Below are positions 35,577-39,105 of a DNA stretch of 64,000 nucleotides, piece after piece. The notes under the pieces were generated by a model. The model was not told where the DNA came from and did not search any database. It worked only from the letters and a program-made list of their open reading frames with translations. Source of the stretch: Thecamonas trahens ATCC 50062 (lineage: Eukaryota; Protista; Apusomonadida); NCBI RefSeq assembly GCF_000142905.1, contig NW_013657661.1:434001-498000 (forward strand), given 5' to 3'. The position numbers were made by a program, and so were the translations under genes. How positions within the stretch are numbered: position 1 is the first letter of the stretch; the number at the start of each line of letters is the position of its first letter.

Positions 35577-38099
35577 TTACAGTGTGGACTGTCCGCGCAG
35601 CCAGGGATGGAGGGCGACGTCCGAGATGGTGAACCGGTGGGCCTCATTGACGACAAGCATGTTGGACATGAGGTCGCGGAGGGCGGGTGACCACTTGGGC
35701 GGGAGGTAGTACGAGCCGGCGACGATGGCCTGCGGGGTCTCGAAAGGCATCTGGCCCTCCATCAAGAGGTAGAGGAGGACGCCGAGCGACCAGATGTCGG
35801 CGCGCTGGTCGTAGGGCGTGTGGAGGAAGCATGCCGGGGAGGCGTAGAACGGCGTGCCACACCACGACGAGAGGAGCTGGCCGGACTCGATGGTGGTGGC
35901 AAAGCCAAAGTCGACGAGTTTGACGTCGCCGGCCGAGTTGACCATGACGTTGTCGAGCTTGATGTCGCGGTGGACAATGTTGTTGCGGTGCAGATAGTGG
36001 ATGGCCTGGACGATGGGGATGAGCAATCTACGGGCTTCGTCCTCGGTCAGGCCGGGCTCGAGTGGGTTGTCGTAGTGCCAAAGGTGGACGAGGTCCGAGC
36101 CGTCGATGTACTCCATGACGAGGTAGAGCCTTGTCTCGGTCTCGACCACGTCAAAGAGCTTGACAACGTTCTCATGGTCGCACACTTTGAGCAGGGCAAT
36201 TTCGTTGTGGAGGCGGATGAGGTCGATCGAGTCGGGCTCGAGCTTGTCGGTCCGCACAATCTTGATGGCGCGGAGCTCACCGGTGGCCTTGACAGTGGCG
36301 AGGCGGACTTCGCCGGACGAGCCCTTGCCGAGCAGGCGCGAGAACGAGTACTTGGCGAGCGCCGGGTGCGAGACCTCGATGGTCGCTTCCTCGCCTGCGG
36401 CACGCCAAACGTCGTTGGCGTCGGGCGGCGACGACGACGACGGCGACTCTCCGCCGGAGCGGACGTCGGCTGGATCGATCCAAGGTGTGAAAAAGGCGGA
36501 GAACATGCGGGTGGAGCGGTCGACCGAGGCTACGGAGCGGTCAGAGGCCTCGCCCCCGGCCGAGGCCAGCGAGTCGACGTGCGAGTCGGCCGAGCTCGAG
36601 CTCGAGCGGACGAGCTCAAGCGGAAAGTAGTCGTCGATGGTGAGGCAGACAACAAACTCGGAGCCGTCCTTGTGATACGAGACGAGCCGGCGCGAGCCGA
36701 GCTTGAGTCGTTGCATCTCCGACTCAAACTCGGCGAGACTCTTGGCCATGGCCTCGAAGCTTGCAGTCGACATCTCGTACGACCGCATGTCGCCGAGGAG
36801 TTTGGAGACGTGGTGGCCGACGAGCTCGCGTGACTCGTAGCCGTACATGAGTCGGAACGAGGGGGTGACCGACTTGATTATGCCCGACGAGTCAAAAGTC
36901 ATCATACACTCCATGTCTTCGACACGGTCAATGAGAGCCTCAAACCGCTGGCCGTCATCGGTCCGCAGCTCCTTGACACGGAGCGAGATGGGGAAGAGCA
37001 GACCGTTCTTGTGGAGACCGGGGACGTGGCGGACTTTGTCGAGCACTTTCTTGACGCCGGTCTCGATGTAGGAGGTCAGGAAACCGTCGTGGGCCGACGA
37101 GTACGGCTCGGGCATGAGCTTCTTGACGTTGAAGCCCTCAAGCTCGAGCTTGGAGTAGCCAAAGATGTCGGTCATCGAGTTGTTGACGTAGGTGATGATA
37201 CCCGAGGTGTCGATGACGGTGTGGCCCGTCGGCGTGTCGTCATGCTCGACAAGCGCCACATACAGCGGGGCGCCCTCTGTGGTTGTCAGCTCGGTGACAT
37301 GCAGCAGCATGTTGAACGTGTGGCCCTTGAGGTGCAGACCCTCGACCCGGCGAGTGATGCCAATGGCTCGGTTCGCGCCGCGCTCTTCGTGGCGACGGAT
37401 AAAAGTGTGGTGCTGCTCGGCAAAATGCACCGGCATCAACACCTCGAGCCGCTCGCCTGCAAGCTCGTCCGACTTCCAGCCAAACATCCGCGCCGCGTAC
37501 GGGTTCGCCGACCGGATGATCGAGTCGGACGTGGCAGTGATGACGCCCTGGAAGCCTTGCTGGATGGTCATGGTCTTGGAGATGCTCATGGCTGCCGCGC
37601 GCGACTTGGCCACCCGCCGTGAGACCGAGTTGTGCGACTTTTTCTTCTTGTGATGCCGGCGGCGCGACCGCTGCTTGCTCGCACCAGCGGCACACGCAGC
37701 TCCAGCCTCGGGCTCAAGCGGCGGCGAGACGGGCATGCCACCATGCCCAGCCACCGGGCACCCGCCACTACTGGCAGCGGTGGCTGACGCCGGAGCTGCG
37801 GTGGCACGACCACTGTAGCCACCAGAGTCATTGCCCTTGGACCGCTTCACGTCTTCCGAGTGGATGCTAGCGATGGTGTCTTCGGACGGGGCACGCTTTG
37901 CCGGGCACACCGATGATGATGAGGGTGAGCTGGTGCCGGCTGTACCGACCGAGCCCATGGTGACCGGCGAGGTCGAGTTTGGCGAGGCAACGCTCGAGCC
38001 GATCTGTGGCGTCTGTCCCGAGACAGACATCGAGCACTGACCCGATGCGGAGATCGATGACGACCTCGAGTAGTACGGCGTCTGAGCCCTCCCGGCCAT
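35577..38099 (-). CDS. Triple-PAS-domain Ser/Thr protein kinase (CAMK group, AMPK/MARK-like catalytic domain)
   Basis: Three PAS domains across about 37560-36640. Kinase motifs LGKGSSGEV, RAIK, HRDIKLDN, DFG, WCGTPFY, DIWSLGV. The start codon is uncertain. Confidence 0.88.
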   Translation of the reverse strand: MAGRAQTPYYSRSSSISASGQCSMSVSGQTPQIGSSVASPNSTSPVTMGSVGTAGTSSPSSSSVCPAKRAPSEDTIASIHSEDVKRSKGNDSGGYSGRATAAPASATAASSGGCPVAGHGGMPVSPPLEPEAGAACAAGASKQRSRRRHHKKKKSHNSVSRRVAKSRAAAMSISKTMTIQQGFQGVITATSDSIIRSANPYAARMFGWKSDELAGERLEVLMPVHFAEQHHTFIRRHEERGANRAIGITRRVEGLHLKGHTFNMLLHVTELTTTEGAPLYVALVEHDDTPTGHTVIDTSGIITYVNNSMTDIFGYSKLELEGFNVKKLMPEPYSSAHDGFLTSYIETGVKKVLDKVRHVPGLHKNGLLFPISLRVKELRTDDGQRFEALIDRVEDMECMMTFDSSGIIKSVTPSFRLMYGYESRELVGHHVSKLLGDMRSYEMSTASFEAMAKSLAEFESEMQRLKLGSRRLVSYHKDGSEFVVCLTIDDYFPLELVRSSSSSADSHVDSLASAGGEASDRSVASVDRSTRMFSAFFTPWIDPADVRSGGESPSSSSPPDANDVWRAAGEEATIEVSHPALAKYSFSRLLGKGSSGEVRLATVKATGELRAIKIVRTDKLEPDSIDLIRLHNEIALLKVCDHENVVKLFDVVETETRLYLVMEYIDGSDLVHLWHYDNPLEPGLTEDEARRLLIPIVQAIHYLHRNNIVHRDIKLDNVMVNSAGDVKLVDFGFATTIESGQLLSSWCGTPFYASPACFLHTPYDQRADIWSLGVLLYLLMEGQMPFETPQAIVAGSYYLPPKWSPALRDLMSNMLVVNEAHRFTISDVALHPWLRGQSTL

Positions 38100-39105
38100 G
38101 ATCACCAGATCATTCTCCGGGACTTGGACCGGTTGACTGGCACCTTTTGCGGGACGCTGCGCCCTGGCAGCTTTTTTTGAATGATGTTGCCCTAGTGATC
38201 GGTGTCCCCCGCACGACACGACGAGAGCAGGGAGTGCGTGAGTCTGGAAGGTCTCTCTGGCACCTCTGCTGCCACTGTCCCCCCCCCCCCCCCCCCCCCC
38301 CCTTCCTTTCGCTGTCACGGTCGGGAGCGGGTGGGTGGGGAGGGGTAGCAGGAGCGTGGGGGGAGGGCACGACGCTGTGAACGTGTCCTGCCCGCTGGCA
38401 GGGAACACGTCAGAGGAAGCAACAAGCGTAGCGCATGACGTACCCATTACAGCGTGAAGGACGGGAAGACGGTGCAAGAAGTAGAAGGGGTGGGGTGGAG
38501 GTGGCGAGGGTGGTGGTTGGAGGGGAGAGGGAGGGGAAGTGCGGTGTGGGTGAGGTGAGGTGGTGCGTCGAGGGGGACGAAGCGGAGGGGGACGGGTGGA
38601 CGGAGGGTGGTGGGAGGCGTGACCAGATCCATGCTTCGACAACGTCGCAAATGATCAACCTGGTCAGTATGGGCAAACGATTAAGGGAACGAAAAACAAT
38701 AGTGAAATTTCCCCAGGGAGGGGGTTGTTGATGCGATGGGCGCAGGATTAGCACGCTAAAGTCGCATCAGTGCAGGGGAGGGAGAGGTGCAGATAGGGAC
38801 TTGGAGTATGCTGTGCGTATTGTGTGTGGGGTGATTGGGAGAAGATAGAGGGCTTGCTTGGGAGGATGTAGTGATACTGGTGATGGATGAGCGCATTGTT
38901 CAGGAATAATTCCCCGCCATCGGCAATGCTCTGGTCATTGTCTCGCCTTTGATTGATCCCACCAAACGGCATATCGTCCTTAATTGGTGCCGCTTCAGTT
39001 TGGATGGGCTGTCAACACGCTGCGATGACTGCCGGCGGCTGGCGGCTGGCGGCTAGAGGCTGGTGCTTCGAGGCACCGGTCGCGTGTGGGAGAGGCAGAA
39101 ACGAC

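What the first reader, a model, noticed from the sequence alone, without database searches (positions are those of the whole stretch)
35577..38099. Candidate eukaryotic heme/O2-sensing kinase: FixL-type PAS domains fused to an AMPK-like Ser/Thr kinase
Seen: PAS1 reads LMPVHFAEQH-HTFIRRHEERGANRAIGITR and PAS2 reads LMPEPYSSAH-DGFLTSYIETGVKKVLDKVR. In both, a His is the 10th residue from LMP and an Arg lies exactly 20 residues later. PAS3 lacks the His. Known: Bradyrhizobium FixL has LMPEPDRSRH with His200 as proximal heme ligand and Arg220 as the distal O2-contacting residue, and it drives a histidine kinase. Animal and yeast PAS kinases are not known as heme proteins. Inference: a two-heme gas sensor wired directly to a eukaryotic CAMK-group kinase, i.e. 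a one-component O2 signalling route independent of HIF.
Basis: partly seen in the sequence, partly recalled or inferred. Interest (0 to 1): 0.8.

Follow-up and report, generated by a model that had tools for sequence, protein, structure and literature searches.

The report
Heme-PAS oxygen-sensor protein kinase candidate
A single-exon gene of the marine flagellate Thecamonas trahens joins two bacterial-type (FixL-like) heme oxygen-sensor domains to an animal-type protein kinase. Many amoebae and single-celled relatives of animals share this design. One survey has listed it, nobody has tested it, and it could be a direct way of sensing oxygen without HIF.

Summary
Window 35577-38099 (-) is one uninterrupted ORF of 840 aa (the start is more likely M24). 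It encodes PAS1, PAS2, PAS3, a roughly 85-aa linker, and a CAMKL Ser/Thr kinase that ends the protein.

PAS1 and PAS2 are true FixL/DosP-type heme-PAS domains:
- Sequence matches to RmFixL reach E 4e-13 (PAS1) and 2e-16 (PAS2).
- The PAS2 model superposes on BjFixL at Z 19.5, rmsd 1.1 A over 105 of 105 residues.
- The proximal His (H230, H337) lies on the F-alpha helix, and the distal Arg (R250, R357) lies 20 residues later at the start of G-beta.

PAS3 has no His and no significant match to any solved structure.

The gene is neither unique nor unnoticed:
[quoted passage not shown] 2023. That paper files it under PASK and notes that its PAS domains fall in the heme cluster.
- I found about 30 sequence clusters with the same layout, in Amoebozoa, apusomonads and unicellular Holozoa. 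In a 19-member alignment the PAS1 His and Arg are invariant.

Best reading (confidence 0.55): a heme-based gas sensor, most likely for O2, that controls a CAMKL kinase. Heme binding, the ligand, the direction of the switch and orthology to PASK remain untested. Interest is moderately high. Novelty: a new variant of a known kind.

The parts
35577..38099 (-). Whole coding sequence (840 aa plus stop), single exon. The alternative and likelier start is M24, at 38028-38030.
37593..38099 (-). N-terminal Ser/Ala/Gly-rich low-complexity region (res 1-169). It ends in a polybasic patch (res 142-156), a possible nuclear localisation signal.
   Evidence: Model residues 1-12 have pLDDT below 50.
37239..37553 (-). 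PAS1 (res ~183-287), a FixL/DosP-type heme-PAS domain.
   Evidence: RmFixL E 4.3e-13. AF2 pLDDT is mostly 80-96.
37410..37412 (-). His230 (CAC), predicted proximal heme ligand of PAS1, on the F-alpha helix.
   Evidence: Aligned to the RmFixL/BjFixL heme His. Lies in helix 55-71 of the model. Invariant in alignment A3.
37350..37352 (-). Arg250 (CGC), predicted distal O2-contacting Arg of PAS1 (equivalent to BjFixL R220).
   Evidence: invariant in A3
36924..37229 (-). PAS2 (res ~291-392), a FixL-type heme-PAS domain.
   Evidence: RmFixL E 2.2e-16. VIA-align to BjFixL 1xj6_A: Z 19.5, rmsd 1.1 A, 105/105 residues.
37089..37091 (-). His337 (CAC), predicted proximal heme ligand of PAS2.
   Evidence: helix 164-178; His in 18 of 26 family members
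37029..37031 (-). Arg357 (CGC), predicted distal Arg of PAS2.
   Evidence: 24/25; nearly invariant
36606..36911 (-). PAS3 (res ~397-498), a divergent PAS fold with no heme His and no significant match to a solved structure.
36351..36605 (-). Ser-rich linker (res 499-583). Its PAS-proximal part is modelled at low confidence; the rest was not modelled.
   Evidence: model residues 334-351, i.e. protein 503-520, have pLDDT below 50
35598..36350 (-). CAMKL Ser/Thr kinase domain (res 584-834): K613, D712 (HRD), D730 (DFG), Ser745 at the T-loop position, and SPA (A756) in place of APE. The protein ends 6 residues after the domain.

Best explanation
This gene encodes a cytosolic one-component gas sensor. 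Two tandem FixL-type PAS domains each hold a b-type heme through a proximal His on the F-alpha helix (His230, His337). There is no Met at the DosP Met95 position (+18 is Ile in PAS1 and Lys in PAS2). The ferrous heme is therefore predicted to be five-coordinate, as in FixL. When O2 binds, the Arg 20 residues after the His (Arg250, Arg357; equivalent to BjFixL Arg220 and DosP Arg97) swings from the heme propionate to the bound O2 and moves the FG loop. That movement is passed through the cofactor-less PAS3 and a flexible roughly 85-residue linker to the C-terminal CAMKL kinase and changes its activity. Transmission is most likely by direct PAS-kinase docking or a change in dimerisation, as proposed for PASK, rather than through a coiled coil as in FixL. 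What is shown: the domain order, homology to heme-PAS O2 sensors, the placement of the key residues, their conservation across a deep eukaryotic family, and intact catalytic Lys, HRD and DFG motifs in the kinase. What is inferred: heme occupancy, O2 as the ligand (rather than NO, CO or redox state), the direction of the switch, and the route of transmission.
For: Sequence. PAS2 matches RmFixL at E 2.2e-16 and BjFixL at about 3e-12. PAS1 matches RmFixL at 4.3e-13 and DosP at 3e-7. Every PDB hit below E 1e-4 is a heme-PAS protein.

Residues. Both domains have the His, the Arg at +20, LMP, and hydrophobic residues at the BjFixL I215/I216/L236/I238 positions. PAS1 also has Arg at +6 (equivalent to SmFixL R200, which binds a heme propionate and matters for signalling, PMC10765370) and Arg at +14.

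Model. The AF2 model has pLDDT 82.9 and shows three PAS folds. Both His lie on F-alpha and both Arg lie at the start of G-beta. Foldseek's best hits are DosP and FixL. With VIA-align the top 13 entries are all FixL heme domains (Z 18-20, down to rmsd 1.0-1.1 A over the whole domain). Other heme-PAS proteins follow at Z ~15, and generic PAS domains reach 14.8 or less.

Selection. About 30 clusters (at 50% identity) share the layout. The PAS1 His is present in 24 of 25 aligned members and its Arg in 24 of 25. The PAS2 His is present in 18 of 26 and its Arg in 24 of 25. His230 and Arg250 are invariant in a 19-member alignment spanning Amoebozoa, an apusomonad and Holozoa.

Kinase. Pkinase E 6.5e-62, with K613, HRD and DFG present.

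Cellular context. Ferrochelatase is present, no H-NOX domain was found, and this is the only PAS-kinase in the genome.
Against: There is no biochemical evidence of any kind. In the Xing et al. heme cluster only about 60% of members keep the His, so cluster membership alone does not prove heme binding. PAS2 lacks the +6 Arg (it has Ser), and PAS1 has Ala at the SmFixL I209 position. AF2 was trained on FixL structures, so the close superposition partly restates the sequence similarity. The T. trahens kinase reads SPA where its orthologue reads APE, so catalytic competence is not assured.
Confidence: 0.55

Rival explanations
1. The domains bind heme but the signal is not O2. The protein reports NO, CO, cellular redox state (Fe2+/Fe3+) or heme availability, as several bacterial heme-PAS proteins and the heme-regulated kinase HRI do.
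For: The heme-PAS fold is used for redox and CO/NO sensing as well as O2 sensing. The fourteenth-ranked structural match is FG214, a heme-PAS redox switch. No H-NOX domain was found in this genome, so another NO sensor would be needed if NO is sensed at all.
Against: The Arg at +20 is the residue that stabilises bound O2 in FixL and DosP (and references there). It is almost invariant in both domains of the family. The closest relatives by sequence and by structure are the two classic O2 sensors.
Confidence: 0.2
2. It is an ordinary PASK-type nutrient or metabolite kinase. The PAS domains descend from heme-PAS domains and still carry the old residues, but they no longer hold heme. Instead they bind a small metabolite or only mediate autoinhibition.
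For: Xing et al. 2023 file the Thecamonas, Acanthamoeba and Capsaspora proteins under PASK. PASK likewise has three PAS domains and a C-terminal CAMKL kinase. Protein-language-model features place the PAS-plus-kinase part of the protein (residues 160-840) nearest to PASK clusters. It is the only PAS-kinase in the genome.
Against: His and Arg are kept across lineages that diverged very early in eukaryote history, which argues for continuing selection. No PAS domain here hits human PASK PAS-A even at E <= 10, whereas FixL hits at 1e-13 to 1e-16. Human PASK PAS-A has lost the His. The linker is about 85 aa, against about 400 aa or more in PASK.
Confidence: 0.17
3. The T. trahens copy is catalytically impaired (the APE Glu is replaced by Ala) and acts as a scaffold or pseudokinase, or the substitution is a sequencing error.
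For: The sequence reads YASPAC with a GCA codon at 35832-35834, where P0002 has APE and P0218 has SPE.
Against: The Gly-loop, K613, HRD, the catalytic Asn and DFG are all intact. The ORF has no stops or frameshifts. A single-residue change at APE does not by itself define a pseudokinase (general kinase knowledge).
Confidence: 0.06

Closest known systems
FixL (Bradyrhizobium / Sinorhizobium), a heme-PAS O2-sensing histidine kinase
   Same: The sensor domain is the same: 30-44% identity, His on F-alpha, Arg 20 residues later, the LMP motif and a hydrophobic distal pocket. The PAS2 model superposes at rmsd 1.0-1.1 A.
   Different: The output is a eukaryotic CAMKL Ser/Thr kinase, not HisKA/HATPase. 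There are two heme-type PAS domains in tandem plus a third PAS. There is no coiled-coil linker and no response regulator partner.
DosP / EcDOS, a heme-PAS O2-sensing c-di-GMP phosphodiesterase
   Same: PAS1 matches it at E 3e-7. It is Foldseek's top hit. It also has a heme PAS followed by a non-heme PAS.
   Different: There is no Met at the Met95 axial-ligand position, so FixL-like five-coordination is expected. The output domain differs.
PASK (PAS kinase; animals, fungi)
   Same: Three N-terminal PAS domains and a CAMKL kinase at the very C-terminus. The literature already groups this protein with PASK and places the PASK PAS clusters next to the heme cluster.
   Different: Human PASK PAS-A lacks the heme His and binds non-heme ligands. 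No sequence hit to PASK PAS-A (1LL8) at E <= 10. The PASK kinase (3DLS) is not among the 60 best solved relatives. The linker is short. Orthology was not tested.
Phototropin (two LOV/PAS domains plus an AGC Ser/Thr kinase)
   Same: The design logic is the same: two cofactor-bearing PAS domains in tandem directly controlling a eukaryotic Ser/Thr kinase in a single chain.
   Different: Phototropin uses FMN and light. The LOV Cys motif is absent here, and the kinase group differs (AGC versus CAMKL). This comparison rests on general knowledge. LOV structures appear only as weak hits.
MARK / SIK / BRSK / AMPK (CAMKL kinases)
   Same: The kinase domain is 33-39% identical to these, with E down to 4e-50. 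The T-loop motif resembles xxTFCGTPxYAAPE.
   Different: In the tree it lies outside the MARK/SIK/NIM1 clade (support 98/96). It has no UBA, AID or KA1 tail. It has Ser in place of the T-loop Thr.
TmcB-like membrane proteins with FixL-type PAS arrays (algal and protist). Chlamydomonas FXL proteins are recalled from memory only, as no paper on them was found in the library.
   Same: These are the other eukaryotic proteins that carry FixL-type PAS domains with the His/Arg motif. Thecamonas has one of its own.
   Different: They have membrane domains and no kinase. They carry up to 13 PAS repeats.

Membership tests
FixL/DosP-type heme-PAS domain (Xing et al. cluster 3) | PAS fold with significant sequence similarity to solved heme-PAS domains | tested here: met
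   E 2.2e-16 (PAS2) and 4.3e-13 (PAS1) to RmFixL. Z 19.5 at rmsd 1.1 A to BjFixL.
FixL/DosP-type heme-PAS domain (Xing et al. cluster 3) | Proximal His on the F-alpha helix | tested here: met
   His230 and His337 align to the FixL heme His. Both lie in the modelled F-alpha helices.
FixL/DosP-type heme-PAS domain (Xing et al. cluster 3) | Distal Arg at the start of G-beta (BjFixL R220 / DosP R97) | tested here: met
   Arg250 and Arg357. Present in 24/25 family members for each domain.
FixL/DosP-type heme-PAS domain (Xing et al. cluster 3) | Basic residues for the heme propionates (BjFixL R206 and H214) | tested here: inconclusive
   PAS1 has Arg and Arg. PAS2 has Ser and Lys.
FixL/DosP-type heme-PAS domain (Xing et al. 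cluster 3) | Stoichiometric heme b and reversible O2 binding | not testable with these tools
   Needs spectroscopy of the expressed domains.
PASK (PAS kinase) | N-terminal PAS domains plus a C-terminal CAMKL kinase with nothing after it | tested here: met
PASK (PAS kinase) | Kinase domain orthologous to the PASK subfamily | not tested
   No PASK sequence could be obtained by reference. PASK 3DLS is absent from the 60 best PDB matches. Kinase-only feature search gives generic CAMK neighbours.
PASK (PAS kinase) | PAS-A of the PASK type (no heme His; matches 1LL8) | tested here: not met
   No 1LL8 hit at E <= 10 for any of the three PAS domains. The heme His is present.
MARK/SIK/AMPK-type CAMKL kinases | Membership of the MARK/SIK/NIM1 clade and a UBA/KA1/AID tail | tested here: not met
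   Falls outside the starred clade. The protein ends 6 residues after the kinase domain.
Active eukaryotic protein kinase | Gly-loop, VAIK Lys, HRD, DFG and APE | tested here: inconclusive
   All are present except that APE reads SPA (A756).
FixL-type two-component histidine kinase | HisKA and HATPase_c output domains | tested here: not met
   Pfam finds neither.

The most novel reading that the evidence does not exclude
This family may preserve the ancestral state of PAS kinase: a heme-based O2 sensor fused directly to a CAMKL kinase. It would already have been present in the common ancestor of Amoebozoa, apusomonads and Holozoa. Such a protein would give these cells a direct route from oxygen to phosphorylation that predates HIF. 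Animal and fungal PASK would then descend from it by loss of heme. Its amoebozoan members would be candidates for the still unidentified O2 sensor of Dictyostelium aerotaxis.
Probability: 0.2. Interest if true: 0.85.

Novelty: new variant of a known kind. Interest (0 to 1): 0.6.

Why it matters
All characterised FixL/DosP-type heme-PAS gas sensors are bacterial. They drive histidine kinases, c-di-GMP enzymes, chemoreceptors or transcription factors. I found no paper reporting a heme-PAS domain that controls a eukaryotic Ser/Thr kinase.

If heme and O2 binding hold, three things follow:
- This would be a direct oxygen sensor that needs no HIF or prolyl hydroxylase, in the closest unicellular relatives of animals and fungi. 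That bears on how the HIF-less ancestor of animals sensed oxygen (PMC5800844).
- It would offer a concrete hypothesis for what PASK, whose natural ligand is still unknown, originally sensed.
- It would give testable candidates for the unidentified aerotaxis sensor of social amoebae (PMC10307954).

The test is simple: expression of a 100-230-residue domain followed by a UV-visible spectrum.

Tried and rejected
- My first guess of a trypanosomatid origin (GC 64%, long intronless ORFs) was wrong. Earlier notes name Thecamonas trahens. [quoted passage not shown] Data S3 and S4.
- I looked for synteny between the window and the orthologue's contig L003 and found none.
- The word-index protein searches found only P0002 and a few PAS proteins. 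A profile query (A3) found no further members and no PASK, so the PASK tree could not be built.
- My first AU test 'rejected' family monophyly (p 0.011). This was only because two true or likely members (P0226, which Pfam shows to be PAS-PAS-kinase, and the fragment P0218) had been left out of the named group. With them included, monophyly is not rejected (p 0.42). Support for the clade itself is only moderate (81/90), and the clade is unresolved in the tree with named references.
- The Cys-Pro 'heme-regulatory' dipeptides in the N-terminal region (res 65-66 and 114-115) are not conserved in P0002, so I do not count them.
- The Pfam HIF-1 search of the genome was uninformative, because the control genomes gave no hits either.
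- Complex prediction (PAS region against kinase) was unreachable and then withdrawn, so nothing was folded.
- The paper on Chlamydomonas FXL heme-PAS proteins is not in the library, so I cite it from memory only.
Full report
WHAT IS THERE

Window 35577-38642 (-) is one open frame. From the ATG at 38099 it encodes 840 residues and stops at 35577-35579. The collection's own model of this gene (P0001, 817 aa) starts at Met24 (38028-38030). The 70%-identical environmental orthologue P0002 begins at the equivalent Met, so Met24 is the likelier start. There are no introns.

Pfam finds PAS domains and a protein kinase domain at 584-834 (E 6.5e-62). An AlphaFold2 model of residues 170-520, built on a 30-sequence family alignment (pLDDT 82.9, pTM 0.70), shows three consecutive PAS folds at about 185-286, 291-392 and 397-498, packed end to end with no helical linker. 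Confidence falls away after PAS3; the Ser-rich linker (499-583) was modelled only to residue 520. The protein ends six residues after the kinase domain.

THE ORGANISM

Earlier notes of this scan name Thecamonas trahens. This fits independent evidence. The assembly has 28,680,627 bases, and Xing et al. list T. trahens at 28.68 Mb. [quoted passage not shown] In the genome itself this is the only gene that combines PAS and Ser/Thr kinase domains. The nearest kinase paralogue is only 41% identical.

Both quoted motifs are present as written. His230 and Arg250 (PAS1) and His337 and Arg357 (PAS2) are spaced exactly as His200 and Arg220 are in BjFixL. PAS3 has no His at that place. A sequence search of the PAS region against all solved structures returns only heme-PAS proteins below E 1e-4:
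- PAS2 matches RmFixL at 2.2e-16 and BjFixL at about 3e-12.
- PAS1 alone matches RmFixL at 4.3e-13, BjFixL at 6e-9 and DosP at 3e-7.

In the printed alignments the His and Arg fall on the FixL heme His and distal Arg. The LMP motif and the hydrophobic residues that line the BjFixL pocket (positions I215, I216, L236, I238) are conserved or conservatively replaced. PAS1 also keeps Arg at +6 and Arg at +14. The +6 position is SmFixL R200, which contacts a heme propionate and affects signalling (PMC10765370). PAS2 has Ser and Lys at these two positions.

In the model both His lie on the F-alpha helices and both Arg lie at the first residue of G-beta. Foldseek ranks DosP and FixL first among 350,542 chains. 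VIA-align re-alignment places PAS2 on BjFixL 1xj6_A at Z 19.5, rmsd 1.1 A over 105 of 105 residues, with 32% identity. The top 13 entries are all FixL heme domains (Z 18-20). The heme-PAS proteins FG214 and DosP follow at Z about 15, and generic PAS domains reach 14.8 or less. Because AF2 has seen FixL structures, I treat this as confirming the sequence evidence, not as independent proof.

PAS3 has no significant match to a solved structure.

THE KINASE

The best solved relatives are MARK4/2/3, SIK3, SNRK, BRSK2 and AMPK (E 4e-50 to 1e-41). PASK (3DLS) is not among the first 60. The Gly-loop, K613, HRD (D712) and DFG (D730) are intact. The T-loop position carries Ser745. APE reads SPA (A756, codon GCA), whereas P0002 has APE.

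In a mixture-model tree with named references, the family sits inside a CAMKL clade (support 95/91). It lies outside the MARK/SIK/NIM1 clade (98/96).

NOT A ONE-OFF

An exhaustive HMMER search of 1.84 billion cluster representatives, using residues 160-840 as the query, returned two groups.

The first group is about 30 proteins of 530-1080 aa. Each has one to three FixL-like PAS domains followed by a CAMKL kinase. Where a source is named, they come from:
- Holozoa: Corallochytrium and Pigoraptor.
- Amoebozoa: Vermistella, Cavostelium, Stygamoeba, Balamuthia and the dictyostelid Tieghemostelium.
- Two entries labelled Mesostigma.
- The rest are from metagenomes.

Xing et al. add Acanthamoeba (two genes) and Capsaspora.

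Conservation across 28 members is high:
- PAS1 His in 24 of 25 aligned sequences, and its Arg in 24 of 25.
- PAS2 His in 18 of 26, and its Arg in 24 of 25.

In a 19-member alignment His230 and Arg250 are invariant columns.

A tree of the individual PAS domains groups second domains with second domains, including the Thecamonas PAS2 (aLRT 81), and third domains with third domains. First domains sit among bacterial and algal FixL-like PAS domains. The three-PAS-plus-kinase layout is therefore old and has been inherited position by position.

The kinase domains of all members form one clade with moderate support (81/90). An AU test does not reject their monophyly (p 0.42). This is consistent with, but does not prove, a single fusion event.

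The second group is giant proteins of 2,000-4,500 aa, described under 'In passing' below.

HOW IT PROBABLY WORKS

By homology, each of PAS1 and PAS2 should bind one heme b through its His. There is no Met two residues before the Arg, where DosP has its axial Met95 (PMC4263535). I therefore expect a five-coordinate ferrous heme like FixL's. O2 binding would draw the +20 Arg into the pocket and shift the FG loop.

The PAS domains abut one another directly, and the link to the kinase is a flexible Ser-rich stretch rather than a coiled coil. The signal is therefore more likely to pass by PAS-kinase docking or a change in oligomeric state, as proposed for PASK (PMC3247726), than by FixL-style helical torque. 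This step is inference. The complex predictor was unavailable. The direction of the switch is unknown: O2 turns FixL off and DosP on.

Ferrochelatase is present in the genome and no H-NOX domain was found.

WHAT IS ALREADY KNOWN

[quoted passage not shown] They take this as evidence that the PASK PAS domains derive from bacterial heme-PAS domains, and they note that human PASK PAS-A has lost the His. The architecture and its cluster assignment are therefore published, in one sentence and one supplementary table.

In the searchable library I found no paper that:
- reports that these protist proteins keep both the His and the Arg;
- proposes them as oxygen sensors;
- maps the family;
- tests heme binding.

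The Acanthamoeba genome paper and a 2023 study of Dictyostelium aerotaxis do not mention them. The aerotaxis study concludes that the sensor is still unidentified.

Whether the family is orthologous to PASK is open:
- For: the architecture, the single-copy status, and protein-language-model features of the PAS-plus-kinase part of the protein (residues 160-840) point to PASK.
- Against: none of the three PAS domains hits PASK PAS-A even at E <= 10, and the kinase alone looks like a generic CAMKL kinase.
- I could not obtain a PASK sequence by reference, so no tree was made.

VERDICT

It is a strong, cheaply testable candidate for a heme-based gas-sensing Ser/Thr kinase, and it is one member of a widespread, uncharacterised family of unicellular Amorphea. 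It is not wholly new, because one survey has tabulated it under PASK. I class it as a new variant of a known kind, with confidence 0.55 in the O2-sensor mechanism and interest 0.6.

IN PASSING

The giant proteins have an N-terminal TmcB-type TPR region and 10-13 tandem FixL-like PAS repeats, most of which carry the His/Arg motif. Thecamonas has a second FixL-type PAS domain, in another gene on contig C71.

No contig here was taken for human. No spliced model had to be joined.

Noticed in passing
L002:1501-1761 (G000:C71:18127-18387, + strand): A second T. trahens gene carries a FixL-type PAS domain with the full ligand set (His, Arg +6, His +14, Arg +20) inside a 1684-aa open frame.
   Followed up: partly
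Proteins P0127-P0165 (metagenome): Giant proteins of 2,000-4,500 aa have an N-terminal TPR_TmcB region (PF25474) and 10-13 tandem FixL-like PAS repeats about 125 aa apart. Most repeats keep the LMP-x6-His-x19-Arg motif. They appear to be an uncharacterised class of multi-heme-PAS membrane proteins.
   Followed up: partly
window 35832-35834 (-): The kinase APE motif reads SPA (Ala756, codon GCA, one base away from Glu). The orthologue P0002 has APE and P0218 has SPE. This may be a real substitution or a sequencing error.
   Followed up: partly
window 37632-37676 (-), residues 142-156: A polybasic patch lies just upstream of PAS1. The orthologue P0002 also has a Lys/Arg-rich stretch at this place. 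It may be a nuclear localisation signal.
   Followed up: no
window 37902-37907 and 37755-37760 (-): Two Cys-Pro dipeptides (res 65-66 and 114-115) lie in the disordered N-terminus. They are absent from the orthologue's N-terminus, so they are probably chance and not heme-regulatory motifs.
   Followed up: partly
Proteins P0182 and P0190 (EukProt, labelled Mesostigma viride): Two PAS-kinase family members attributed to a green alga nest among the holozoan members (Corallochytrium, Pigoraptor) with 100/98 support. This points to contamination of that data set or to gene transfer.
   Followed up: no
Protein P0121 (EukProt tig00021522_g22102): A 1352-aa algal-type protein has three FixL-like PAS domains at its N-terminus, followed by a long hydrophobic region that may span the membrane, and no kinase. 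It is 30% identical to the PAS region here.
   Followed up: no
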